From IMG/VR virus record IMGVR_UViG_3300032294_002797, positions 159,303 to 223,302 of that record: a stretch of DNA of 64,000 nt, one strand, 5' to 3'. Below are positions 18,136-58,500 of the stretch, one piece after another; the stretch's first letter is position 1; every line of letters starts with the position of its first letter. A program made the position numbers and the translations under genes. The notes beneath the pieces were generated by a model that did not search any database, had not been told where the DNA came from, and saw only the letters and a program-made list of their open reading frames with translations.

Positions 18136-18484
18136 CAGGATTTATAACTGCTAAATTCGGACTAATCAAGAAAGCGTTTTTTACTTTGGTGTCTGATGGT
18201 AGAATAGTTGTATAATTAATTTCTAATATACTTCCATTCTTTTTAACCCCCAATAAATTATAATAAGGAGTATATTTCTCTGGACTAGTAGTTATATTTT
18301 TTTCTATATGATCATATAAAAAATTAGTTAGATGATCATCTAAAGTTAGGTTGTGTGTATCTTTATCAAGATTCAAGAAAAAAGATAAAGGCATATAGTG
18401 TCCATCGGTAGATGAGACAAAATATCTATTGCTTTTATCTTTTATATAGATAGCTGCCACTAGATTACATTTAACTTCAGGCAT
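18107..18484 (-). CDS. hypothetical protein
   Basis: ORF overlapping the sigma factor stop. Confidence 0.55.
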   Translation of the reverse strand: MPEVKCNLVAAIYIKDKSNRYFVSSTDGHYMPLSFFLNLDKDTHNLTLDDHLTNFLYDHIEKNITTSPEKYTPYYNLLGVKKNGSILEINYTTILPSDTKVKNAFLISPNLAVINPVARKAMAYV

Positions 18485-19067
18485 ATTGTCTGATCCTGGA
18501 TAGACCCTTTTGAATATTTTGTCTAATTGCTTCTCTAGTGACGCTGTATTTATTACCTATCTCTAGTAATGTCTTATTATTAAAATAATATTCATAGATT
18601 TGATCTTTTTGCTTATCAGACAAGATATCTGAATTCAAAATACATTCTATATATTTTGCTATCATATCTTTCTCTTCTTGTTCGGATACAATTTCAAAGG
18701 GATCAGACACTCCCTTGGTCTCTATATTTGATATATAGCTACGATTTTCCTTGTTATCGGAGGCATATTGATCCAGAGAATAATTGGTATTTTTCTTTTT
18801 ATAACGATTAGATAAATATGTTTTAATAGCCCATAAACCGCACTGATTACGATAAGAATACTTGGTTTTCGATTTACCATTGTATCCCGTGCGAGTCTTG
18901 TCCCATTTCCAATCTGCTATCATTATAGCTTCTGCAATTTCTGATATTGCTTCTTCATTAGATAATAATTCTTGTCTTAAATTATTGTAAAATGACGGAG
19001 CAAACTTAGAAATAATTTTTTTAGCTAAATTTATATAGGTATCCAGAGTCTCAAATTGCTGTTCCAT
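18477..19067 (-). CDS. RNA polymerase sigma70-family factor
   Basis: Region 4 HTH LSDKQKDQIYEYY..TLLEIGNKYSVTREAIRQ; region-2-like N-terminus. Confidence 0.85.
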   Translation of the reverse strand: MEQQFETLDTYINLAKKIISKFAPSFYNNLRQELLSNEEAISEIAEAIMIADWKWDKTRTGYNGKSKTKYSYRNQCGLWAIKTYLSNRYKKKNTNYSLDQYASDNKENRSYISNIETKGVSDPFEIVSEQEEKDMIAKYIECILNSDILSDKQKDQIYEYYFNNKTLLEIGNKYSVTREAIRQNIQKGLSRIRQYA

Positions 19068-19096
19068 TTAATGTCCTTATAAAAGTAAATTTTGGC

Positions 19097-19537
19097 TTAT
19101 TTTTTCTGAGTCTTTTTTGTCAGTTCTTCCCATTGTTTGGGATTAGGTCTATCTTTATCTCCGGGCTTGGCTGGTCTGTATTTTTTACCCTCTCTTTCTC
19201 TTTTTTTACGGATGTTTTCCCACAGACCCGGGCGAGAACTACCAGTAGATTCATCGTCACTTTCTGTGACATACATCACAAAATCATGGATGGTTCTAAC
19301 ATAATCCTCAGTTATGGCAATTTTACCCTGAAGCCAGCTCTCTGTCAAGTTTTCTTTTACGTGCGGAGAGTCAATAGAATTTATTATATTATTGATATTA
19401 GCCACCATGGCTTTTAAAGATCCTAGACTCATTTCATAGAAATCTTCTTTGTATTCTTGTAGATCATCATTAGTCGAAGACAGTACCTGATCGATATGTG
19501 ATAGAATTTCATTCTTACGATTGGTCATTATTATCAC
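19097..19537 (-). CDS. hypothetical phage protein
   Basis: ESWLQGKI and PGLWENIRKKR motifs, which I recall from large-phage proteins. Confidence 0.6.
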   Translation of the reverse strand: MIIMTNRKNEILSHIDQVLSSTNDDLQEYKEDFYEMSLGSLKAMVANINNIINSIDSPHVKENLTESWLQGKIAITEDYVRTIHDFVMYVTESDDESTGSSRPGLWENIRKKREREGKKYRPAKPGDKDRPNPKQWEELTKKTQKK

Positions 19538-20207
19538 CTTTAGTATATTGTATTAAGTCGTTAAAAAGATTTTTTACTAATAGCACTGATGCGTCATTAT
19601 CGCTAGGAAAATGAACTCCTTGCTTAACTCTAGCTAACATTACTTTGCGAGTAGCTTCTGCTAATTCATCTTTCAAATGAGGGAATTCGACAGTTAATAG
19701 TTGTTCGGCAAGTGCCGCGTATGCTACATGACCCGAGGGATAAGCTGGCGTATGATGAGTTCCAGTGTGTATTACATCTATATTAAGATTATAGAATTCA
19801 GCTATTTGATTAGGTCTGGGTCTATTAAATAGTATTTTTAAATCAGACACAATCTCATACAATAAAGCATATAGTGTATCAAATTTGTTTTGGGGAAAAG
19901 GTAGACTATATTTTTTAAGTATCGTCTTATAAATAATTAATGGATCCTCATCTATTAAGAGAATAGTTTCTTTGATATTAAGAGGGATATTTGAAGTTTC
20001 TTTAATAAGATGCTGAATTTCTGCCTTAGTAATATCACTAGAATTACTTGGAGGACAATCTATTAGATCTATATATTTAAAAGGTAAATAAGATTCTAAT
20101 TCTGTAGGTCTACTCTTATGTATATAATTTTTATATACTAAATTATCTAAATTGGATTGTTTTTTATTAACAATAATATCTTGTATTTTTTTGATTAAAC
20201 TGAACAT
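19515..20207 (-). CDS. PAP2-superfamily acid phosphatase
   Basis: K....RPRP, YPSGH, R...GVHFPSD. Confidence 0.9.
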   Translation of the reverse strand: MFSLIKKIQDIIVNKKQSNLDNLVYKNYIHKSRPTELESYLPFKYIDLIDCPPSNSSDITKAEIQHLIKETSNIPLNIKETILLIDEDPLIIYKTILKKYSLPFPQNKFDTLYALLYEIVSDLKILFNRPRPNQIAEFYNLNIDVIHTGTHHTPAYPSGHVAYAALAEQLLTVEFPHLKDELAEATRKVMLARVKQGVHFPSDNDASVLLVKNLFNDLIQYTKGDNNDQS

Positions 20208-20212
20208 ATTTA

Positions 20213-20773
20213 TTATACTTGTAATGTTAAAAAATTATCTATTCCCATTTGTTCTATCAATTTAAGATATCCTTCATATAGTTTAATGCCATCTTCACTA
20301 CCTTGAAGTAGCGGGATCATAGTATTGGCCGTAAGTTCGTCTCCTACGGCTCGTGCAGCAACAATAGTGGCTCGTTCTGCTGTCGATGCTTCTCTAACTG
20401 AGGCTAGATTGTAATTAATCATTGCCACCATATCATGTCTTGTCCATCTTGGTAGAGATACATTAAGTGGCTGGTAATCAACATCAAAAAACTCTAAACG
20501 TGTTAAGTTTATCATAGCATGTTCATGTTCTTCCAAAGCATCAGCTTTAATAATTGCTGCTAATTTTTTATAGCCCCATCTTTCAAGATGCACTGCTTGT
20601 GCCGATAATACTGTTGTTTGTTGCCAGTGAATATTAAGAGATTTTTTAAGAAGTTCTATCACCGTTTCTGTAGAATATTTTGTGACTTCTTGAGCTTGTG
20701 TGTTTTCTGATTTGTTGTCCATATTAGATATTTTGCTTTCTTGATCTTGTAATAGTTCTGATATAGGTTTCAT
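20213..20773 (-). CDS. bfr: bacterioferritin-like protein (degenerate ferroxidase centre)
   Basis: WGYKKLA, EEHEH, GDELT, IEQMGIDNFL follow the Bfr pattern. Confidence 0.75.
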   Translation of the reverse strand: MKPISELLQDQESKISNMDNKSENTQAQEVTKYSTETVIELLKKSLNIHWQQTTVLSAQAVHLERWGYKKLAAIIKADALEEHEHAMINLTRLEFFDVDYQPLNVSLPRWTRHDMVAMINYNLASVREASTAERATIVAARAVGDELTANTMIPLLQGSEDGIKLYEGYLKLIEQMGIDNFLTLQV

Positions 20774-20777
20774 ATTA

Positions 20778-21338
20778 TCACCAAGCTTTGCATGACCAGT
20801 ATCGGGCTTTATACTTAGGTCCAGGATTATCGCAGTTGTGTCGTGCTCTAAAACTTTTACGTCTTTCGGGAATATTTTTTTTAATTTTCATATTAGGATC
20901 ACCAAATCTAACTATTATAACCTTGCCTTTTTCATTTTTAACATAAACCGCAGATTTTTTAGGTCCATCAGGAGTTCTGAAAGGTTTATTAAGAGTTACT
21001 TTCCGTCCTTGATATTCTGATGCTATCAGATGAGAAATATCATATTCTTCTATTTCTTCACCAAAGTCAATATAGTCTTCTTCTTTAGGAATCAATAGAT
21101 TTGATAATGTAAGAAGTTCTTCTGGATCATCACAATCCTCACAATCATAGGCTAGGCTGAAACCTAATATCTCCATGACCTGATCAATCAAACTACTCTT
21201 AGATTTTTTGGTTTGACCCAAACATACGGACACTCTTTGTTTGGTGTCTTTATAGTCTTTTTTCATTGTTTCGTCACTCATGCAACGACTAACAAATTTT
21301 TGACTATCTTCATCTTTTCTTGGCTTTGGAATTGGCAT
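20778..21338 (-). CDS. conserved phage protein (basic FRARH.C..YWSC domain)
   Basis: RFGDPNM..RRKSFRARHNCD..ARYWSCKAW. Confidence 0.65.
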   Translation of the reverse strand: MPIPKPRKDEDSQKFVSRCMSDETMKKDYKDTKQRVSVCLGQTKKSKSSLIDQVMEILGFSLAYDCEDCDDPEELLTLSNLLIPKEEDYIDFGEEIEEYDISHLIASEYQGRKVTLNKPFRTPDGPKKSAVYVKNEKGKVIIVRFGDPNMKIKKNIPERRKSFRARHNCDNPGPKYKARYWSCKAW

Positions 21339-21392
21339 AGAGTATCTCCTAGATAAATATTAATACACCAATAAAATAACTGAATTTGACCA

Positions 21393-22463
21393 CTAAATGT
21401 GGTTTTTTAAACAGTCTATGGTGCTGGACCAGCTAAGTTTTTTAGCAGTTTCTAAGCCATTGCTATTTGTTCTGATATTATTCTTATACACGTGTTGCAT
21501 ATAACCTATAGTCTGATCTATTTGTGATTGTCCTAATTTCGCCCAATTTCCATTACCAAAAAACCATTTATTATCTATCGCAGGTTCTTTATCTTCGATT
21601 TGCACAAGATAACTATTGTTTTCATTACAATATTCTGTATGAGCAGAATAATTCGATGCTATAACAGGTTTATTCATAGCCATAGTTTCTAATAATTCCA
21701 TATTCCAGCCTTCTCCTCTGGAGATATAGACACCACAATCTGTATAAGAAATAATTTTTGCTACATCTTTTTGTGATGGTACTCTAGGGAAAATTTTAAT
21801 TTTATCTTTTAGTTTGCATTCCATGACTTTGGTAATCCAGACATTTTCTTCTTCAGGAGTAAGAAAGCCGTTATGAGTCAACATCCATAATTCTACATTA
21901 TCATTTGTATTAAAAGCTTTATTAAAACAATCTATAATAGTATCATGTGCTTTTCTTTTTTCCCATTTTCCTATAGTAATAAAAATGTATTTATCTCGTG
22001 GTATGGCTTGATGAGTATTTAGAGCGTTGTCAAAAATAGATCTATCTACTCCTAGTTTTACTATATCAATTTTAGTTTTAATATCATTATCTATCAATAC
22101 TTGTTTGGCCCAAGATGAGGAAACTATGATTTGATCTGGAAAATTTAGATTAATTTTATCTTTATTAGACAGAGAATCCGTCTCAAAAAATGGCATAGCC
22201 ATATATTTCCCCTTGCCTATACGAGACATAAGATCAAACTGGTGCCATATTTTCAGACATGTTGCATTGTATTCTATACTGTCTAGGTTAGACATATATT
22301 TTTTTACAATGGACGCATCGTCTTCATGATCTATACTAGGATTTCCTATGGGGTATAAGCCAATATTATCTAAATTATGATCTATATAAAATCCCTTAAG
22401 AATATTTAACCCGACATAACCATATCCAGTATATCCTATTGGACTCATAATTGTAGTTTGCAT
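21393..22463 (-). CDS. GT4-family glycosyltransferase
   Basis: GKWEKRK, SRGEGWNMELLETMAMNKPVI (EX7E). Confidence 0.9.
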   Translation of the reverse strand: MQTTIMSPIGYTGYGYVGLNILKGFYIDHNLDNIGLYPIGNPSIDHEDDASIVKKYMSNLDSIEYNATCLKIWHQFDLMSRIGKGKYMAMPFFETDSLSNKDKINLNFPDQIIVSSSWAKQVLIDNDIKTKIDIVKLGVDRSIFDNALNTHQAIPRDKYIFITIGKWEKRKAHDTIIDCFNKAFNTNDNVELWMLTHNGFLTPEEENVWITKVMECKLKDKIKIFPRVPSQKDVAKIISYTDCGVYISRGEGWNMELLETMAMNKPVIASNYSAHTEYCNENNSYLVQIEDKEPAIDNKWFFGNGNWAKLGQSQIDQTIGYMQHVYKNNIRTNSNGLETAKKLSWSSTIDCLKNHI

Positions 22464-22469
22464 AGTAAC

Positions 22470-23594
22470 TTATATTCCTAATAATGGATTTTTATTATTG
22501 TGTATTGTATTCGCTTTACAAAATTGGCTGCACTTTGACATGTATTTAATCTGAGAAGCCCCTATGTAACAACAGCAGGAGCGTATGCCTCCTAACAGTT
22601 CTTGTATTACTTTGTCTAAAGAACCTTTATATTTAACTATTATTTTTGTGCCTTCACTTGCTCTATACTCTTTCACTGTATCTTCGTATAGTTGTTGAGA
22701 GTGGTGTGTGCTCATACCATAATAAGAAAATTTAACTTTACGTTTTTCTGTTGGGTATCCAGGATCATTTGGTTGATAAAAATTGCCATGACGAACTAGA
22801 TATTCATATTCCCATTCTCCGTCGCACGGATCACTTCCAGCAAAATAACCACCCAACATAACAAAATCTGCCCCAGCACATAGAGCCTTAGAAACATCTC
22901 CAGAAGTCTTATGTCCTCCATCAGAAACGATTAAGCCGAGTTTCTTGGGTCCATTTTGAAGACCATGAGCGACATAAGCATTTTCTAAACAGGCGGATAA
23001 CTGAGGCATTCCGCAGCCGGTTAGGAATCTTGTGGTACAGGCCGATCCCCCGCCTATTCCGACTTTTACTATGTCTACGCCGCCATAAATCAAAAGTTCT
23101 TGAGTAGATGATGTATTAGTGACATTTCCTGCAATAATAATTGATTCTGGAAAATGCTCTCTAACCTTATGACAATACTTAACAAAAACATCCATATGAC
23201 CATTGGGAACATCAATGCAGATATTTGGTTGTTTGCCTAGTTTTTGTTTAAGTTCTAGCAAATGAGCTAGGTCACTCTTTTTATATCCTATAGATACGAA
23301 AGTATAGTCAATATTGTTCGGATGTTTTATAAAATAATTTACTAATTCATCTACACTATGGTATTTATGTAAACATGCTATTATCTTATGATTAGCTAAG
23401 TCTTTAGCCATATCAAAACTACAAAAACTCATATTAGCACACATGATAGGTATACCAGTCCAAGTTCTTGGACTATGGTAAAAACTAAATGTTCTTTCTA
23501 AATGAATTTCTGATCGACTAGTTAGAGTGGATCGTTGAGGTACTATAAGAATATCATCAAAATCCAATTTGGTTTCATCAATAATTTTTTGCAT
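22470..23594 (-). CDS. guaC: GMP reductase
   Basis: LDFDDILIVP.RS, CIDVPNGH, KVGIGGGSACTTR, SDGG, YRASEG; no CBS domains. Confidence 0.9.
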   Translation of the reverse strand: MQKIIDETKLDFDDILIVPQRSTLTSRSEIHLERTFSFYHSPRTWTGIPIMCANMSFCSFDMAKDLANHKIIACLHKYHSVDELVNYFIKHPNNIDYTFVSIGYKKSDLAHLLELKQKLGKQPNICIDVPNGHMDVFVKYCHKVREHFPESIIIAGNVTNTSSTQELLIYGGVDIVKVGIGGGSACTTRFLTGCGMPQLSACLENAYVAHGLQNGPKKLGLIVSDGGHKTSGDVSKALCAGADFVMLGGYFAGSDPCDGEWEYEYLVRHGNFYQPNDPGYPTEKRKVKFSYYGMSTHHSQQLYEDTVKEYRASEGTKIIVKYKGSLDKVIQELLGGIRSCCCYIGASQIKYMSKCSQFCKANTIHNNKNPLLGI

Positions 23595-23600
23595 ATAATA

Positions 23601-24080
23601 TTACTTATCTTCCTTGTGAATAGTATTCTTTCCTTCTGGAAATTGATATAATACTCCGTAACTTATAAAAATTTCTTGGTTTTCTCGTATTGGTTGAGTT
23701 GCTTTACATCTACCTATAAGTTGTGTGTAATCTATTACAATCTCTGCATTGGGGTCGTCTTGATGATTATATATTCCTCCATACCCTAATCTTAGACATA
23801 AAACTTCTCCGTGTCTTTTGCATTCCTCACACTCGCATTTTTTTGCAACAGAGTACTCTAGGACTCTGGTATCTCCTTGGTAATGTGTGCGGAAATACAA
23901 CGGCACCAAAGGAAATATTTCTATCACATCGCCTATAGAAAAATTTTTCTTTGCAAAAACCCCTATACCATGAACATCCGAAGCTTTAACATAAACTAAT
24001 TCTGAGGAGCATGCTATTTCAGGTAGTTTTGTAGACTCTGGTATATTTGGTATGGCTTTGGTTTTTGTTGTATCTAGCAT
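23601..24080 (-). CDS. SET-domain protein-lysine methyltransferase
   Basis: HGIGVFA, YNHQDDPN, EIFISYG..Y. Confidence 0.85.
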   Translation of the reverse strand: MLDTTKTKAIPNIPESTKLPEIACSSELVYVKASDVHGIGVFAKKNFSIGDVIEIFPLVPLYFRTHYQGDTRVLEYSVAKKCECEECKRHGEVLCLRLGYGGIYNHQDDPNAEIVIDYTQLIGRCKATQPIRENQEIFISYGVLYQFPEGKNTIHKEDK

Positions 24081-25971: not shown

Positions 25972-25999
25972 ATTATACAACAACCGGGGAATGGGTCAA
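25972..25999 (-). promoter_or_regulatory. sigma70-like promoter
   Basis: TTGACC-N16-TATAAT. Confidence 0.7.
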
Positions 26000-26009
26000 G
26001 AATCGTTTT

Positions 26010-26930
26010 TTACATAGTTGGTCTAATAATACCATTACCTTCGTATCTCCTTAATCCTCTATATTTAGCATTATTTAATGGCATAGTATTTTTTTTAAAA
26101 TGATCTATGTATTCTTTTTGTTGAGGTTTTGCTAAGGGATCTTTTTTTCTCAATAAGGAAAGCCATAAAGCTGCACACCCCACAGCAAAAGGAGTAGACA
26201 TACTAGTACCAGACATTACGGCATAACTATTGCCTGGTGCTGCGCTAATAATATCTGCTCCTGGGGCTAGGAAATCCAAAGAATCACCAGTACAACTAAA
26301 TTGACAAATATCTAGACTCCGATCAATTGCTCCTATACTTATAGTCTCATCATATTTAGCAGGAAAATTTATTTCATGTTTTAATCCACTATTACCGGCG
26401 GCACAAAAAATAATCACTCCCTTACCTGTAGCATATAGCAATGCTCTTTCAATGGCTAAAGAAGGATAAGTTGATCCAAGTGACATTGTTATTATATCTG
26501 CCCCATGATCTGTCGCCCATACTATAGCAGAACCGACGTTGTTATTGGAACCCATACCACTATCATCAAGTGCTTTTATAGGCATAATTTTAACTGATGG
26601 AGCCACCCCTACTATTCCTCTATTATTATTGATAGCGGCGATAGTTCCTGCAACATGAGTTCCGTGTCCATTAACATCTATGGGATCTGTATTCGGTTGA
26701 ATAATATTGTACCCGTCAACTAGATTATCTTTAATATCATCATGATTGATATCACAACCGGTATCTATTACAGCAACAGTAACTCCTACCCCATTTGTTT
26801 TAGACCAACATGTTGGAACATCGAATAATGATATAGACCAAGGGAATATTTGTCCTGCAGAAGCTGATAATCCGTATATAGGCTCTTTAATATGCGGTAA
26901 CAGTCTACATTCTTTACGATTTCTATTCAT
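26010..26930 (-). CDS. subtilisin-like serine protease (S8)
   Basis: VAVIDTG, HGTHVAG, AAGN, GTSMSTP. Confidence 0.95.
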   Translation of the reverse strand: MNRNRKECRLLPHIKEPIYGLSASAGQIFPWSISLFDVPTCWSKTNGVGVTVAVIDTGCDINHDDIKDNLVDGYNIIQPNTDPIDVNGHGTHVAGTIAAINNNRGIVGVAPSVKIMPIKALDDSGMGSNNNVGSAIVWATDHGADIITMSLGSTYPSLAIERALLYATGKGVIIFCAAGNSGLKHEINFPAKYDETISIGAIDRSLDICQFSCTGDSLDFLAPGADIISAAPGNSYAVMSGTSMSTPFAVGCAALWLSLLRKKDPLAKPQQKEYIDHFKKNTMPLNNAKYRGLRRYEGNGIIRPTM

Positions 26931-27708
26931 GGGGAGACACTTTCTCTAATAGTTGTTTATTTGTATCAATCCAATCTATATAATAGCTGATTCTTGTGTG
27001 TCCACTCTCATCTCCATAATTAGAGTCTGTTAATCTATCTGAGGCAAATACGCACGAGTGAATACCAGCTAATTTTTTATCTATAAATAATCCACCTCCA
27101 CTATCACCAGGAGTGATTAAACACTCTAATGAGGTTTTTGGTTTGTCATCATTAGTACAAATAAGTAAATGATTTTCTATCCTATTGATTATATTGGAGC
27201 CTGCTCTTTTTTTATTTGCTGGTATATTTTTATCAAACCCTGTAATAAAATTGCCGGGGGATCCGAAACCGGCCTGACTACTAACTTTTCCTACCTCGTT
27301 AGTCTCATTATAAAGATTAGGATAAAAATTAAGCTTAATAGGGATTTCTAATTTGCCGATTGCTATGTCATAAAAACCTATCTTTCCACGCAAAAATTTG
27401 TCATGTATTATAAAAGAAGAGCAGGGATAAATATTTTTATCAAATAAAACCATAGGCTTATCTGAACCATCCAAGATGTGTGCGGCGGTTAAAAAATAAT
27501 AATCTCCAATTAACACACAAGATCCACGATAAGGAGTATGTAATTCATCTTTATAATTACCGATTATAGATAATACGCATTCATGTTGCGCCCCATAATT
27601 AAGATATTCATCGTCTGATCGCACAGGATCCATAGTAATACTATAACTAGTAGTACTATATAATAAAATAGAAATACAAATAATAATTTTTAAAATATAT
27701 GTAAACAT
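26923..27708 (-). CDS. trypsin-like serine protease (S1) with signal peptide
   Basis: LTAAH, DIAI, GDSGG; hydrophobic N-terminus. Confidence 0.9.
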   Translation of the reverse strand: MFTYILKIIICISILLYSTTSYSITMDPVRSDDEYLNYGAQHECVLSIIGNYKDELHTPYRGSCVLIGDYYFLTAAHILDGSDKPMVLFDKNIYPCSSFIIHDKFLRGKIGFYDIAIGKLEIPIKLNFYPNLYNETNEVGKVSSQAGFGSPGNFITGFDKNIPANKKRAGSNIINRIENHLLICTNDDKPKTSLECLITPGDSGGGLFIDKKLAGIHSCVFASDRLTDSNYGDESGHTRISYYIDWIDTNKQLLEKVSPHE

Positions 27709-28019
27709 TATTTACTCTTTTTAAGCTTAGCATTATATGCTAGACTATCAGATACAATATCAGGATTCCAGCTTTTCCAGTTCATTAAGTGTCCAAATAT
27801 AAAATGACAATATTTATCACAAAGAGTAATTAAATTATTAGAATCTAATTCTTTGTCACTATCTATATGAACAGGAATGATATGATGAACTTCTGGATTT
27901 TTTTTCGAACCACAAGCCATGCAATTAGGATATATTTTTAGATGCTCGTTTCTGATAGATTTCCATTTAGGGGATCTATATGCTTCACGAATACGAGTAT
28001 TTAATGGCCAAATTCTCAT
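27708..28019 (-). CDS. small HNH endonuclease
   Basis: CxxC..VHHIIP..NLITLC...CH. Confidence 0.85.
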   Translation of the reverse strand: MRIWPLNTRIREAYRSPKWKSIRNEHLKIYPNCMACGSKKNPEVHHIIPVHIDSDKELDSNNLITLCDKYCHFIFGHLMNWKSWNPDIVSDSLAYNAKLKKSK

Positions 28020-28023
28020 TGTA

Positions 28024-29022
28024 TTATAATGATGCGGCTATTAGGCATCCTTTAGCTACAGCGTGTAACGGATTAGTAGACATACTGATTTCGGATATTG
28101 CTAGTGGAAAATTACATTCTGTTAATTTTTGAGATAAACTTTCTATATAACCATCGGCTTGGGAAGTGCCTCCAGCAACTATAATTTTAATTGGTTTTTT
28201 AAACTTAGGCAAAGATTTATGATTACTTAATGCATAAGATAACTGTTTTGCTGTATATTCAACCAATCTTTCATAGTATGATGACACCGCGTTTAAAACC
28301 GGATTGTCATTGGGGTGTCCGACTTTAAATCCGCCCGCCTCCTTCTCGATCTGAACTACGCTATCGGGTTCCCCTGTGGCAACAGAACTCATTCTATCAA
28401 TCCAATCGCCGGATTTTGTTGTGGAGAATACAACGGTGGGCTCGCCGTTTAACATAACACATACATTAGTCATCCCGGCACCACAACTTATACCAATACC
28501 AGTATAATCATCTCTTTCTAATTCTGCATAACATAAAGCTTCGGCTTCGTTGATAGATTTAGCATCATATCCCACCTCTGATAGTATAGTTTTAACGACA
28601 TCTTCATGATATCCTACATCAAAATCATCATCTTCTTGATCTATCGGCTGTGCAGGAACGCAGAATACTAATTTTTCATTTGCTTCTGTGGCTTTTCCTA
28701 CTACTTCTTTTAAAATAAAGGCGAGTATTCGTTTAGCATCTTTTTCTTTTACTGACACCACTCCTCTATACATTGGTCTTCTTGCAGTTTCATTTCTTTC
28801 TACGGCTTTTTCTATAGCATCTTTACCCAATAAGATAAATGATCCATCCGTATCTCTGATAAAAATTTTGCCTTTTAATCCTTTTTCTATCATTTTATTA
28901 GCAACGGGGGTTGAAGGCTTAATAACATAAAAAGCATCTCTGAATTCTTTGAAAATTAAACCCTTAGAACCTTGTTCAGACATGACTATAAAAGATGTTC
29001 CTACGTCTAAACCTTTACTCAT
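28024..29022 (-). CDS. actin-fold ATPase (MreB/MamK/FtsA superfamily)
   Basis: Phosphate-1 GLDVGT, connect-1 INEAEA, phosphate-2 SCGAGMT, adenosine VAGGTS, connect-2 PLHAVAKG. Confidence 0.85.
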   Translation of the reverse strand: MSKGLDVGTSFIVMSEQGSKGLIFKEFRDAFYVIKPSTPVANKMIEKGLKGKIFIRDTDGSFILLGKDAIEKAVERNETARRPMYRGVVSVKEKDAKRILAFILKEVVGKATEANEKLVFCVPAQPIDQEDDDFDVGYHEDVVKTILSEVGYDAKSINEAEALCYAELERDDYTGIGISCGAGMTNVCVMLNGEPTVVFSTTKSGDWIDRMSSVATGEPDSVVQIEKEAGGFKVGHPNDNPVLNAVSSYYERLVEYTAKQLSYALSNHKSLPKFKKPIKIIVAGGTSQADGYIESLSQKLTECNFPLAISEISMSTNPLHAVAKGCLIAASL

Positions 29023-29024
29023 AA

Positions 29025-29369
29025 TTAACCTTTCATATCTTTTAATTTATTAATTGATGATATTATATCCAGAGACACTTCTTTGTTTTCTGTGATGGTG
29101 TCATATTTTTTTTCCAAACTATTGGTATTAATTGATCCTACCACTTTTGTTTCGTCGATTGATACTTTAGGAGTAGTATTTTGACCTATTTTTTTAGATG
29201 ATGTGACTCTACTCTCTATAGTTATACACATATTTTTACCAATGAAAATACCTCCAATAAACAATAATAATTGTAATGAAGAAAAAATTAAGTATAAAAT
29301 AATACTAATATTATATTCCATGAATAAATAAATTGATAAGGGTGTATATCTTATTAGATTTTTTTGCAT
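29025..29369 (-). CDS. single-pass membrane protein
   Basis: Hydrophobic IILYLIFSSLQLLLFIGGIFIG; ends 2 nt before the actin-like ATG. Confidence 0.65.
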   Translation of the reverse strand: MQKNLIRYTPLSIYLFMEYNISIILYLIFSSLQLLLFIGGIFIGKNMCITIESRVTSSKKIGQNTTPKVSIDETKVVGSINTNSLEKKYDTITENKEVSLDIISSINKLKDMKG

Positions 29370-29395
29370 TATTACTATAATACACTAAATAAGCC

Positions 29396-29728
29396 ATGCT
29401 GACTACACAAAAATCATGGGGTGAAACTAACCTGGTATTCGATAATAGTACTGTACATGTATATATGGCTCATGTCAATAAAAAAGGATATTCTTCTAAA
29501 CATTATCATAAATATAAAAAAAATCTACTTTTTGTCCATAGTGGATCTTTATTAATTAGAAGATGGGTAGATAACGAACAGATAATAGAAACCCTATTGA
29601 AGAAAGGCGAATCTATTGTTATTCCCAATGAACAATGGCATCAATTTATTGCTCAAGAAGATACAGATCTTCTAGAAATTTATTATACGGTATTAGATCA
29701 TGAAGATATTATCAGATCTATTTTTTAG
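29396..29728 (+). CDS. cupin (mannose-6-P isomerase/lyxose isomerase-like)
   Basis: KSWG, SKHYH..K, WHQFIA..D..LLE. Confidence 0.8.
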   Translation: MLTTQKSWGETNLVFDNSTVHVYMAHVNKKGYSSKHYHKYKKNLLFVHSGSLLIRRWVDNEQIIETLLKKGESIVIPNEQWHQFIAQEDTDLLEIYYTVLDHEDIIRSIF

Positions 29729-30359
29729 GAATCATTCACTCGATGTGAGTCATTTTTTTCTATTTGCTAATACAGAATATAGTAAAAATACAGAAAAACA
29801 ATTGTGGGAATCGTCTGCGTTTTTAAGCAAGAAATCTATTTGTATATTATTTAATTTAGCAAAGCCCTTGGACTACTATAGTATAGTTCAAAAACATGCA
29901 AATAAATGGATTTTTTTTCGGCTATTAGCAGACAATACAAATAATACTTATTATAGAAATTTGGATTTACTAAATTTGTATGATTTTCAAAAATTTTTTT
30001 TAATACCAGATATGTATGACGCTATCTATTTTGGCCCTAAAAAACAAGCGATATTAGAAACAATATCATATATTAAACAAAAGAATATAGACATAACAAA
30101 AATGAATCATATGGATATAAATAATAAAGTGCTGGAATCTGTCAAATCTTTATATCCAATCCAAGAAAATAAAGGAACTATGAGTAGTGGATTATGGACT
30201 TATCTATATCTGAAAACAAAATATCCCTTATCAAAATTTACTTTAATAGACTATGCTTTAAATATGAAATCTGCTTATCATAATTCGTTATTTGAACAGG
30301 GATTTATATTATCAGAAATATTGAGCAACCAATGTGAATACATTGGCGATCATTTATGA
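29700..30359 (+). CDS. hypothetical protein, possibly glycan-related
   Basis: Overlaps the cupin; MSSGL..Y..L and H...FE motifs. Confidence 0.5.
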   Translation: MKILSDLFFRNHSLDVSHFFLFANTEYSKNTEKQLWESSAFLSKKSICILFNLAKPLDYYSIVQKHANKWIFFRLLADNTNNTYYRNLDLLNLYDFQKFFLIPDMYDAIYFGPKKQAILETISYIKQKNIDITKMNHMDINNKVLESVKSLYPIQENKGTMSSGLWTYLYLKTKYPLSKFTLIDYALNMKSAYHNSLFEQGFILSEILSNQCEYIGDHL

Positions 30360-55595: not shown

Positions 55596-58500
55596 AATGC
55601 CGTTATTACTCCCAATACAGCAAAACTGGCTACGAAAAAAACCACAAAAGTAGTTACTGGATCAGTATAGTTTTTAAAGTCCATAATCAAAACACTCTAC
55701 TTTCTTAATTATTTTACGTTTATCGTATTTTATATCATCATTAATATGTTTTTGTGCTTGTTCTATATTAGAGAATTTATCAATGGTTCTAAGCGGCCCA
55801 ACTCCTGTATACGATGACATATAAGACCAGAATAACCATCCCTTTTTTAAAATTTGATACCATTCTTCATCGTTATCATTAACAAATTTACATATTTTAT
55901 ATTTATTCATATCTTGTTTCCCATATAACATCATTAAATTCCATTAATCCTATTTCGCTATGTATCATGGGGTAATATCCCCATAAGTATACAGCATGAC
56001 CTCTTGTCCAACCTAGTTCATCTGGTATGCAAAACCATACTGGAGTATTATGCTGTAAAGTATAGTGTTGACCAATAGGTATTAGTAATAGAATCAATGA
56101 GTAAATATATTTCACTCCATTCCTCCCATCAACCACTTCTTAACATTAATAGGATGGTCATTACTAAATTGTGGAGTTGAACTAATATAGCCAGCAGCCA
56201 TAGATATTACTACGTTTTGTTTTTCAATAACTCGTTCCAGATCTATATTTCTAGATTTAAGATTGTAGTAATCTGTTTGGCATTTTTGAATTTCTTTATT
56301 GGCTTTCGCCATAGTATCTATTAGTCTATCAATTTCTTTATTTTTTTCTTGTTCCAGTTTTTCTAACTTTTCTTCTAATTCTTTATAACTTTTACCTGGA
56401 GCATAAACTCTTGCTGTACATTTATTGTATTCTTCTTGTTGTTTTTTGAAATTTTTTAGATCAGCAATTTTATATCTTAGTTCTTCATTTATTTGAACTA
56501 ATTCATCATAACTTAATTTATTATAATCGCTCATTTAACATCCTTTTCAATTTCTTAATAGCCATAGTTCTGCTATCTTTCATAAGTTCATCAATAAGAT
56601 CATCAACCCTCTCATCCAGCGTCAATTCTGCTGGTTTAGGCGGTACAGGCGGGTTTATCAAATCTGTAAATATTGATCTTAGATTCGTTATCATACCATT
56701 GTCATACAAACCTATGTTATACATTTGTGCTGAAAAACTATCACAATTGGTGATAAAATAGTTGTTCTTGAAAAATAAGTCATGCTCACTATCTGTTGTA
56801 TGCTTATCGGTTTTATGAACCATAATAAACTTATCAAAGATGGTAATTTCATTATTAAGGTTGAGCGTTAAAATATCGTTTTTAGCATCATGCTTATCAT
56901 AAGTTAGTGGATGATTAATAAAATCAGATTTCTTATAGCGATTCAAAGTAACAAAACTATCAGTGTGCTGTTCATGACTGAACTTGATATCTGAATCATA
57001 ATAATAATGATGACCATAATCTAATAAATTTGATGGGCCGTATGTTTGAAACGATTGTATAGAGTAGATGCGATCATTAATAACCCAGCGATACTTTATA
57101 TCATAAAAGTCGCTGCCCGGTTTTTGTGCAAAATTTAAGCAATATGGTATTATATCTTTAAGTCTCATCTTATTCCCTTAGCTAAAATACATAGTATCTA
57201 GTTTCTTGATAATATTAATATAAACTTCTGGCTTATCATATATTTCAATACCTTCTGGCCCATTATCTATTTCTTTAAGTTTATCTTCTAATAATTCTAT
57301 TAGAATATCTAAATCTTGATTAGTTAGTTTCATTTTTCTTAAAACCCCTTAGCGGTAATGTGATATCTATGATTATCTTTTTTATCTCTATGAGCATGAA
57401 AGAGTATTTCACTAAATGAGACTGAATAGAATTGGTTAATCATTTCTTTATGAAAATACTGTAGCAAGTCTTTTGGGGTGAACTCCCTATCATCTTTCCA
57501 GTAAACGGCATAACCGTAATCTTGTTTATCTACTTCAGCCCAACCATATACCTCGTTCATATTTTCTGTTTCGAGTGTTTTTGCTGTAAAAATACTAAGA
57601 CTGTTTATTTGACCAATACTCTCTTTGTTTAAAGACGGTAGTAGTTTAGTAAAACCCAACATAAATTCTGCGTAGGCTTCTGGTATACTGTTAACAATTA
57701 TTTTTGTTGTCATATGAATAATCTATCTTTTAGTAAGTCTCGTATCGTGTCTGTAATATTAATTCCATTAACTATAATACTATCTTTATCTGGATATCTT
57801 CCAGCCTCTCTATCATACAGCCACCAAATAGCAAACTCTTGGTCTCTGGTTAATTTAATATTGCTTTTAACATTCTTGTTCATATCCAGCAACAACTGAT
57901 TCATAGTCTCTTTGCTAGCATAAATAACTTCTGACGATGATGGATCGGTAGAAGTGATATCTATAGCCATATTAAACGCCCCAGTATTTGGATATGCAGC
58001 ATATTTTCCCCAACCCATTTTATCATATAGTTCTTGCATACTATCATCAAGAGTTTTAGGAAACATCCAATCAAATAAACTTAAAAAGCCATTTAAAAAA
58101 CTCATGACTCTACCTCTTCTGGTCTTAATACTTTTAGTTCTAGTGCTGATGTTAACAGCAAGTGTTTATTATTGATATTGCTGTCTTTTTTCCAATCTAT
58201 AATTTTTTGTTCAACTCTGTGATAAGTTTCAGCACTTAGTTTATCTACAGTAGAGAATACTAGAACATCGTCTGGTTTTAAACTCATTACTGATATTTGT
58301 GGTAAATCATTCATTTTGATAATATCCATAGCGTTGTGATAAATAAAGATGCTTGAACTATTGGAAAAACAGCAACATAAAGCGACCAACGATTAAGAGC
58401 CACAGGAATAGCTGAACAGATAAAACAAACAACGGGAAAAGTTAATATAATCCACATCATTATATGAGCCAATATACTATCTTGTGCTTGAGGACTATCC

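What the first reader, a model, noticed from the sequence alone, without database searches (positions are those of the whole stretch)
26010..29386. Operon of membrane protein, actin-like ATPase, HNH, exported trypsin and subtilisin
Seen: five abutting or overlapping genes behind an RGTGTAT motif (29380-29386). The ATPase has all five actin-fold motifs, but phosphate-2 reads SCGAG (no Asp). Known: jumbo-phage cytoskeletons are usually tubulin (PhuZ); phage actins are known from few cases (e.g. AlpC of corynephage CGP3). Inference: a membrane-anchored actin filament system for positioning DNA or capsids. Coupled to an exported protease, it could instead be a protease-based envelope remodelling or egress module; no endolysin was recognised in this window.
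Basis: partly seen in the sequence, partly recalled or inferred. Interest (0 to 1): 0.72.

Follow-up and report, generated by a model that had tools for sequence, protein, structure and literature searches.

The report
Phage actin with a membrane adaptor
An uncultured 223-kb aquatic jumbo phage carries an actin-like (volactin-family) gene paired with a small membrane protein predicted to dock onto it, which points to an unstudied actin-based phage cytoskeleton; the nuclease and two protease genes beside it are neighbours, not shown to be parts of it.

Summary
The five minus-strand genes are real, tightly packed, and sit behind a promoter-like motif whose placement is non-random. The ATPase is a full-length member of Pfam Volactin (215 bits; MreB, MamK, BeeR and salactin models all fail). 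Its nearest solved structures are filament formers (MamK, BeeR, MreB). The missing phosphate-2 Asp is a trait of the sampled family, not a defect of this copy.

The upstream gene encodes a single-pass membrane protein. Its conserved C-terminal tail (…INKLKxMKG) recurs at the end of the gene upstream of volactin genes in distant phages and in Planctomycetota chromosomes. It is predicted to bind the actin (ipSAE 0.65 against 0.00 for the best control). This adaptor-actin pair is the core.

The HNH gene is a mobile hitch-hiker. The trypsin-fold protease has a conserved Sec signal peptide. The subtilisin does not: it looks like an intracellular ISP-type enzyme, so "exported subtilisin" is wrong. 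Every related locus with full flanks keeps at least one of the two proteases, but coupling to the actin is unproven.

Ten peptidoglycan-hydrolase families gave no hit in the genome. Polymerisation, membrane tethering and the cellular role are inferred. This is a new variant of actin-plus-adaptor systems.

The parts
29380..29386 (-). AGTGTAT, a promoter-like positional motif (RGTG followed by TATnnn). It lies in the short divergent intergenic region ahead of the unit.
   Evidence: Genome-wide, 26% of hits lie within 80 nt upstream of a same-strand gene, against 2% for control heptamers. Function as a promoter is inferred.
29025..29369 (-). Adaptor: a small bitopic membrane protein with an N-terminal TM helix, a variable linker, and a conserved cytoplasmic tail ending INKLKDMKG. 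The likely true start is Met17 at 29321.
   Evidence: alignment A2. There is no Pfam or PHROG hit. The family has 197 homologues, all unnamed. Binding to the actin is predicted. The same tail sits upstream of volactin genes in distant phages and in Planctomycetota.
28024..29022 (-). Volactin-family actin-like ATPase, 332 aa.
   Evidence: PF25216 scores 215 bits over profile positions 1-321 of 321. The AF2 model has pLDDT 96.7. Foldseek gives MamK filament TM 0.74, BeeR 0.73 and MreB 0.67. The family profile matches MamK in the PDB at 3.5e-17. It is the most conserved gene of the neighbourhood, at 76-84% identity.
27708..28019 (-). Free-standing HNH endonuclease, probably a homing-type mobile insert.
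   Evidence: PF01844 and several PHROG HNH families match. It is present in 24 of 41 full-flank loci. Its position varies: right after the actin, upstream of the adaptor, or kilobases away.
26923..27708 (-). Chymotrypsin-fold (S1) serine protease with an N-terminal Sec-type signal peptide; exported.
   Evidence: PF00089 scores 42.9 bits. Nearly all of the 42 distinct relatives show the signal-peptide pattern: a short n-region, a hydrophobic core, then a small-residue site before GTIDP. One has a truncated N-terminus. TAAH and GDSGG are present in 42 of 42. No signal-peptide predictor was available.
26010..26930 (-). Subtilisin (S8) without a signal peptide or prodomain; ISP-like, presumably cytoplasmic.
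   Evidence: PF00082 scores 184.6 bits. No relative among 26 has a hydrophobic N-terminus. ECRLLPHIKE aligns with EIRLIPYEVK of intracellular serine protease 7y6m. Intracellular proteases align over the longest span. DTG and GTSM motifs are present in 26 of 26.
25972..25999 (-). Sigma-70-like site (TTGACC, 16 nt, TATAAT) between the subtilisin stop and the next gene. It is the likely start of the next transcription unit.
   Evidence: This is a consensus match only: such sites are not enriched in the region (50 found against 43 ± 7 expected).

Best explanation
The core of the locus is a two-gene cytoskeletal cassette of a bacterial jumbo phage. The first gene encodes a small adaptor that is held in the cytoplasmic membrane by one N-terminal helix. 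The second encodes a volactin-family actin-like ATPase.

The adaptor's conserved cytoplasmic C-terminal tail docks onto the actin. The actin itself has no membrane-targeting extension. ATP-driven filaments would therefore be tethered to, or grow from, the host membrane during infection. They could organise the infected cell by positioning replication or assembly sites, or by changing cell shape or division.

The HNH gene is a selfish insert into this highly conserved region.

The two serine proteases are co-oriented and probably co-transcribed neighbours with different destinations. The S1 protease goes across the membrane. The ISP-like subtilisin stays in the cytoplasm. Their link to the actin is conserved in this lineage, but its mechanism is unknown.

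Shown: the gene structure, the family assignments, the synteny, the conserved tail, and the signal-peptide pattern. Predicted: adaptor-actin binding. Inferred: polymerisation, membrane tethering, and the cellular role.
For: - Family: Volactin HMM scores 215 bits against a cut-off of 35, over the full length. The H. volcanii founder forms dynamic filaments whose tips touch the membrane (PMC10869688).
- Fold: the nearest solved structures are filaments, namely MamK, BeeR, MreB and actin. No Hsp70 or sugar kinase is in the top 50.
- Tree: the family is separated from MreB (100*). The window sits in a clade of eight sequences, all from phage contexts (98*).
- Pairing: an upstream ORF abuts the actin in 76 of 80 IMG/VR loci. 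The tail is conserved while the rest of the adaptor diverges.
- Same tail elsewhere: the KL[KR]x[LM] tail sits upstream of volactin genes at 40-55% actin identity and in Planctomycetota chromosomes. hhalign of the phage tails against the planctomycete tails gives E 8e-4 with the motifs in register.
- Rarity: the motif occurs in the last 20 residues of only 2 of 488 ORFs in this genome.
- Complex prediction: ipSAE 0.65 against a best control of 0.00. That mark was reached by 58 of 80 solved complexes and by 2 of 110 mismatched pairs.
- Conservation: the actin is the most conserved gene of the neighbourhood. Relatives of it carry inteins. Both are typical of an important gene.
- Topology: basic residues follow the TM helix, which puts the tail in the cytoplasm.
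Against: - No experiment bears on the phage protein. Polymerisation is inferred from family and fold.
- Phosphate-2 lacks the Asp that is needed for hydrolysis in ParM and MamK (my own knowledge). The kinetics may therefore differ.
- I could not obtain the H. volcanii sequence to compare it directly.
- The complex score is the model's own confidence, and my own alignments were used.
- The hhalign probability is only 24%.
- One distant phage locus has ClpP rather than an adaptor directly upstream (L175). The 595-kb phage shows no clear tail motif.
- RNA libraries hold only diverged fragments of relatives' actin genes, so transcription is not shown.
- The host is unknown.
Confidence: 0.6

Rival explanations
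1. Protease-centred envelope remodelling or egress module. The exported S1 protease, possibly together with the subtilisin, attacks envelope proteins at lysis or during takeover. The membrane-anchored actin serves to place or time this activity.
For: - All 41 related loci with full flanks keep at least one of the two proteases, with intact catalytic motifs.
- The cassette volactin-HNH-trypsin-S8-trypsin persists at 55% actin identity.
- Other protease classes (ClpP, M24, Trypsin_2, M42) flank volactin genes in more distant phage contigs.
- The S1 protease has a conserved signal peptide.
- Ten peptidoglycan-hydrolase families gave no hit in the 223-kb genome.
Against: - The subtilisin is intracellular in type.
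- Subtilisin is missing from 16 of the 41 loci and trypsin from 6.
- The proteases near distant volactins are mostly cytoplasmic housekeeping types.
- Some contexts have no protease at all (L090, L173, and the two huge phages).
- The distant contexts may share ancestry, so they are not independent observations.
- Two of the ten hydrolase searches had no positive control. An unrecognised endolysin, or one embedded in a giant structural protein, is not excluded.
- The neighbourhood is otherwise a replication and metabolism region.
Confidence: 0.15
2. A non-polymerising membrane complex that works like PilM-PilN. An actin-fold ATPase is clamped to the cytoplasmic peptide of a bitopic membrane protein and acts as a switch or platform rather than as a filament.
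For: - The architecture is an actin-fold protein plus a short cytoplasmic peptide of a single-pass membrane protein.
- PilM appears among the structural matches (ranks 36-40).
- The unusual phosphate-2 could mean weak hydrolysis.
Against: - PilM matches are much weaker (TM 0.52-0.55) than MamK (0.74) or BeeR (0.73).
- The family founder polymerises in vivo.
- In several relatives the adaptors have no TM helix and are instead long coiled coils. That fits filament adaptors better than a membrane platform.
Confidence: 0.1
3. A DNA-partition or DNA-transport system of the ParMRC or AlpAC kind. The adaptor links phage DNA to a pushing filament.
For: - The logic is the same: an actin-like protein plus an adjacent adaptor with a binding tail.
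- A related bacterial cluster fuses volactin to an HU-type DNA-binding domain.
- RuvB and a weak RuvA-C-like gene lie just upstream.
Against: - This adaptor consists of a TM helix plus a tail and has no recognisable DNA-binding domain.
- No ParM or StbA family hit was reported.
- No centromere-like repeats were looked for.
Confidence: 0.05

Closest known systems
Volactin (VolA, HVO_2015) of Haloferax volcanii; Pfam PF25216
   Same: It belongs to the same Pfam family, with a full-length match of 215 bits. Volactin forms dynamic filaments that touch the membrane by their tips (PMC10869688). That behaviour fits a membrane-end adaptor.
   Different: This copy is encoded by a bacterial phage, not an archaeon. 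It sits in a phage clade separate from the Planctomycetota clade. It has a dedicated TM adaptor. No partner is described for VolA in the paper I read. VolA acts in the rod-to-disk shape change, whereas the phage role is unknown. I could not compare it directly with the VolA sequence.
ParM-ParR (plasmid R1) and AlpC-AlpA (prophage CGP3)
   Same: The working logic is the same: an actin-like filament with an adaptor encoded next to it that binds the actin through a short terminal segment. AlpAC is a phage-borne precedent (PMC5539076).
   Different: The sequence families differ. Those adaptors bind DNA, whereas this one is a membrane anchor. Here the adaptor gene lies upstream of the actin.
MamK (with MamJ), BeeR, MreB (with RodZ)
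   Same: These are the nearest solved structures and profile matches: MamK at 3.5e-17 and TM 0.74, BeeR at TM 0.73, and MreB. MreB-RodZ is a precedent for an actin-like protein held by a bitopic membrane protein.
   Different: The curated models fail: MamK 26 bits against 400, BeeR 27 against 530, salactin 25 against 400, MreB_Mbl 19.8 against 27. The protein has no amphipathic helix of its own.
PhuZ tubulin spindle of nucleus-forming jumbo phages
   Same: It is a phage-encoded cytoskeleton in a jumbo phage, and so an analogue in concept.
   Different: The fold is different. No tubulin-family hit was found in this genome.
Intracellular subtilisin proteases (ISPs) of Bacillus (2x8j, 7xr8, 7y6m)
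   Same: The subtilisin has no signal peptide and no I9 prodomain. It has a short N-terminal extension whose LLPH aligns with LIPY. Its alignment to ISPs spans more of the protein than its alignment to secreted subtilisins.
   Different: It is phage-encoded. Whether the extension inhibits the enzyme, and what the substrates are, is unknown.

Membership tests
Volactin (Pfam PF25216) | Score above the curated gathering threshold over the whole profile | tested here: met
   215.1 bits against a cut-off of 35, covering residues 1-330 and profile positions 1-321 of 321. The six-frame genome search gave 214.7 bits.
Volactin (Pfam PF25216) | Actin-fold nucleotide motifs as in the family (phosphate-1 DxGT, phosphate-2 SxGxG, adenosine GGT) | tested here: met
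   D6, G8, G181, G183, G284 and G285 are invariant. T9, S179 and T286 are at least 90% conserved in 67 family members.
Volactin (Pfam PF25216) | Forms dynamic filaments in cells | not testable with these tools
   Shown only for H. volcanii VolA (PMC10869688).
MreB/Mbl (PF06723) | Score above the gathering threshold | tested here: not met
   19.8 bits against 27, a partial match. Bona fide MreBs form a separate branch with 100* support.
MamK (NF040964), BeeR (NF053558), salactin (NF053533) | Score above the NCBIfam cut-off | tested here: not met
   26.4 against 400, 26.9 against 530, and 24.8 against 400.
ParMRC / AlpAC-type partition systems | ParM/StbA-type actin and a DNA-binding adaptor | tested here: not met
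   No such family was reported for the actin. The adaptor has a TM helix and no recognised DNA-binding domain. DNA binding itself was not tested.
Actin-plus-adaptor cassette (functional class) | The adjacent partner binds the actin through a conserved terminal segment | tested here: inconclusive
   The prediction supports binding: ipSAE 0.65 against a best control of 0.00. That mark was reached by 58 of 80 solved complexes and by 2 of 110 mismatched pairs. The tail is conserved from phages to Planctomycetota. No physical test was possible.
Homing-type HNH endonuclease | HNH motif plus patchy presence and variable position among close relatives | tested here: met
   PF01844 scores 29.7 bits. 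It is present in 24 of 41 loci at several positions. Nuclease activity was not tested.
Sec-exported S1 serine protease | Catalytic His/Asp/Ser and an N-terminal signal peptide | tested here: met
   TAAH and GDSGG are present in 42 of 42, and the Asp motif in 41 of 42. The signal-peptide-like N-terminus is conserved. This was judged by eye and by hydrophobicity, with no SignalP.
Intracellular subtilisin protease (ISP) | No signal peptide or prodomain; a short N-terminal LIPY/F-type extension; an intact triad | tested here: met
   The motif reads LLPH here, and LLPH or LLPY in relatives. An inhibitory role was not tested.

The most novel reading that the evidence does not exclude
An abundant, uncultured clade of aquatic jumbo phages builds a membrane-anchored actin (volactin-type) cytoskeleton in its bacterial host. 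It uses an adaptor family that is shared with Planctomycetota chromosomes. This cytoskeleton is functionally coupled to phage serine proteases that take the place of a canonical endolysin in remodelling or opening the envelope.
Probability: 0.15. Interest if true: 0.88.

Novelty: new variant of a known kind. Interest (0 to 1): 0.68.

Why it matters
Phage cytoskeletons are known mainly from the PhuZ tubulin of nucleus-forming phages and from a few actin-like partition proteins. Here an actin of the recently named volactin family is among the best conserved genes of a widespread aquatic jumbo-phage lineage. Homologues number 1928, and 320 IMG/VR contigs carry one.

The actin comes with a previously unnamed adaptor family. 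The actin-binding tail of that adaptor is also found next to volactin-like genes in Planctomycetota. This gives a concrete two-protein system that can be expressed and imaged without the unknown host. It also supplies a candidate binding partner for a family whose partners are not described in the papers I could search.

The papers in the held library that mention volactin (17 held, 14 listed) do not, by title or abstract, deal with phages.

Tried and rejected
- The single-sequence search against PDB sequences found nothing useful. The family profile was needed.
I therefore could not fetch H. volcanii VolA or test archaeal loci.
- The phage collection holds no cultured relative. The actin matches only two uncultured huge phages at about 32% identity. 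The terminase is at most about 26% identical to those of Bacillus siphophages.
- PADLOC gave only generic subtilase hits, so the locus is not a known defence system.
- Sigma-70-like and terminator-like sites are not enriched in the region.
- Metatranscriptome contigs cover only diverged pieces of the actin gene and do not show transcription or co-transcription.
- Host: one adaptor homologue is binned in a Chitinophagia MAG. The phage uses strong Shine-Dalgarno sites, which argues against Bacteroidota on my own knowledge. An archaeal host was considered and rejected because the replication genes are bacterial (split DnaE, DnaB, DnaG-like), as are RuvB and a sigma-70 region-4 protein.
- I considered the idea that the Asp-less phosphate-2 marks a dead ATPase. 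I rejected it as a special feature of this copy, because the trait is shared across the sampled family.
Full report
WHAT IS THERE

The window is the last 64 kb of a 223,302-bp IMG/VR virus record that CheckV rates complete. The genome has a large terminase, a portal, tail-fibre-like genes and nine tRNAs. It also has two giant ORFs of 4690 and 5391 aa. Its replication genes are of the bacterial type: a split DnaE, DnaB, a DnaG-like primase and a ribonucleotide reductase. No cultured relative exists in the phage collection. Runs that hold this DNA come from lake, wetland and other aquatic metagenomes.

Five minus-strand ORFs lie at the stated coordinates, with gaps of 2 and 4 nt and overlaps of 1 and 8 nt. 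Pfam assigns them as follows:
- no family (114 aa);
- Volactin, 215 bits, full length;
- HNH;
- Trypsin;
- Peptidase_S8.

They follow a 26-nt divergent intergenic region that holds AGTGTAT. As a bare heptamer the motif is not enriched in the window, but its placement is non-random. Genome-wide, 13 of 50 copies are intergenic and within 80 nt upstream of a same-strand gene. Same-composition control heptamers average 2% and reach at most 8%. A sigma-70-like site follows the subtilisin stop. Both are read as promoters by inference only.

THE ACTIN

The protein fails the curated models for MreB, MamK, BeeR and salactin. It passes Volactin by a wide margin.

A family profile finds MamK (3.5e-17), BeeR, MreB and FtsA in the PDB. 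An AlphaFold model (pLDDT 96.7) is closest to the MamK filament (TM 0.74), BeeR (0.73), MreB and actin. No Hsp70 or sugar kinase appears in the top 50.

A quick LG+G4 tree of 118 sequences gives three results:
- the family is separated from MreB (100*);
- Planctomycetota and Omnitrophota form one clade (100*);
- the window falls in a clade of eight sequences that all come from phage contexts (98*).

The phosphate-2 motif SCGAG is real, but S179 is at least 90% conserved and the two glycines are invariant across 67 diverse members. The Planctomycetota pattern is the same. It is a family trait, at least in the phage and bacterial members sampled.

The family founder, H. volcanii volactin, forms dynamic filaments that bridge the cytoplasm and touch the membrane by their tips (PMC10869688).

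The family is large. The word-indexed search gave 1928 hits. The exhaustive search gave 932 clusters at 50% identity. ESM Atlas clusters named Volactin are 93-100% viral.

Some relatives carry LAGLIDADG inteins inserted just before the GDW motif. The gene is the most conserved in its neighbourhood, at 76-84% identity against 31-73% for its neighbours.

THE ADAPTOR

The upstream ORF has one N-terminal hydrophobic helix followed by basic residues, then a variable linker, then a conserved tail. The tail reads I-x-I-D-D-T-K-V-V … L-E-K-K-Y-D … I-S-S-S-I-N-K-L-K-N-M-K-G. Relatives start just before the helix, so Met17 (29321) is the likely start.

The family has 197 detectable members. All are about 100 aa, unnamed, and without a Pfam domain.

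The same extreme C-terminal motif, KL[KR]x[LM], ends the gene upstream of volactin genes in more distant phage contigs:
- L086, at 55% actin identity, with a TM helix;
- L174, at 40%, with a TM helix;
- L173, L088, L090 and L176, which are soluble and coiled-coil rich.

The motif also ends the 230-470-aa coiled-coil proteins encoded immediately upstream of volactin-like genes in Planctomycetota chromosomes. A profile-profile comparison aligns the phage tails and the planctomycete tails in register, with E 8e-4 and probability 24%.

In this genome only 2 of 488 ORFs have the motif in their last 20 residues.

The complex prediction for the actin with adaptor residues 38-98 scored 0.65 against a best control of 0.00. 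That mark was reached by 58 of 80 solved complexes and by 2 of 110 mismatched pairs. The counts hold only roughly, because my own alignments were used.

The confident interface covers tail residues 66-97. On the actin it covers residues 98-107, 165-173 and the C-terminal helix 317-332, plus 14-27 and 46-65. I read this as the IA/IIA cleft running up to subdomain IB. That reading is an inference, because I could not inspect the coordinates.

The actin has no terminal extension of its own. Any membrane attachment would therefore need the adaptor.

THE OTHER THREE GENES

HNH. It is present in 24 of 41 full-flank loci. It lies directly after the actin, upstream of the adaptor, or kilobases away, and it is absent from close relatives. 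This is the behaviour of a mobile endonuclease.

S1 protease. Nearly all of the 42 distinct relatives carry a typical Sec signal peptide ending before GTIDP; one has a truncated N-terminus. All 42 keep TAAH and GDSGG. Its closest solved relative is only a crab collagenase, at E 2e-4.

Subtilisin. It has no hydrophobic N-terminus, here or in 26 relatives. Its N-terminal ECRLLPHIKE aligns with EIRLIPYEVK of an intracellular serine protease (7y6m). Intracellular subtilisins align over a longer span than secreted ones do. It is therefore ISP-like and presumably cytoplasmic.

IS THE PROTEASE LINK MEANINGFUL?

In 41 loci with full flanks, trypsin is present in 35 and subtilisin in 25, and every locus has at least one of them.

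At 55% actin identity the order is RuvB, adaptor, volactin, HNH, trypsin, S8, trypsin. More distant phage contigs have ClpP, M24, M42 or Trypsin_2 within a few genes. Others have only glycosyltransferases or nothing recognisable.

These contexts may share ancestry, so they are not independent observations.

Ten peptidoglycan-hydrolase families gave no hit anywhere in the genome; two of those searches had no positive control. No tubulin was found either. A protease role in egress therefore stays open but unsupported.

VERDICT

The best-supported mechanism is an adaptor-plus-volactin cassette that tethers ATP-driven filaments to the host membrane. Polymerisation, tethering and purpose remain inferred.

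It works like ParMR, AlpAC or MreB-RodZ. By family it is a volactin.

I found no paper on phage volactins or on this adaptor in the held library.

Noticed in passing
window 56521-57168 (-): A 215-aa ORF with no Pfam hit is the only other ORF in the genome that ends with the KL[KR]x[LM] motif (…AIKKLKRMLNERL). Its last 45 or so residues are almost identical in relatives that are only about 52% identical overall. It may be a second actin-binding adaptor.
   Followed up: partly
Proteins P0122 and others; ESM Atlas cluster: Homologous phage actin genes of about 700 aa carry a LAGLIDADG intein inserted between FSTTK and GDWxD. In L176 a Vsr-like endonuclease ORF sits between the adaptor and the actin. 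The locus attracts selfish elements.
   Followed up: partly
Whole genome G000: Ten common peptidoglycan-hydrolase Pfam families gave no hit, and neither did tubulin. How the phage lyses its host is open.
   Followed up: partly
L091-L170 (Planctomycetota and Omnitrophota genomes): Volactin-like genes are widespread in Planctomycetota: 476 stretches matched. Each one examined is preceded by a coiled-coil protein with the same C-terminal tail. Variants include a tandem double actin (P0126), a fusion to a Wzz/BY-kinase-like C-terminal region (P0172, judged by eye), and an HU-domain fusion in Acidobacteria.
   Followed up: partly
G000:C1:47946-62018 and 75495-91670: Two giant ORFs of 4690 and 5391 aa, plus others of 1488-2772 aa, lie in the structural region.
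   Followed up: no
window 29396-30359 (+): A cupin gene and a 219-aa ORF on the opposite strand separate RuvB from the adaptor here. They were detected in only 11 and 6 of 80 related loci, so this is a variable insertion point.
   Followed up: partly
window 18477-24080 (-): Auxiliary genes lie nearby: a sigma-70 region-4 protein, a PAP2 phosphatase, a ferritin-like protein, a glycosyltransferase, an IMPDH/GMP-reductase-like enzyme and a SET-domain protein.
   Followed up: no
G000:C1:122719-127102 (-): DNA polymerase III alpha (DnaE) is split into two ORFs about 830 bp apart. One carries PHP plus the NTPase domain; the other carries the finger, HhH and OB domains.
   Followed up: no
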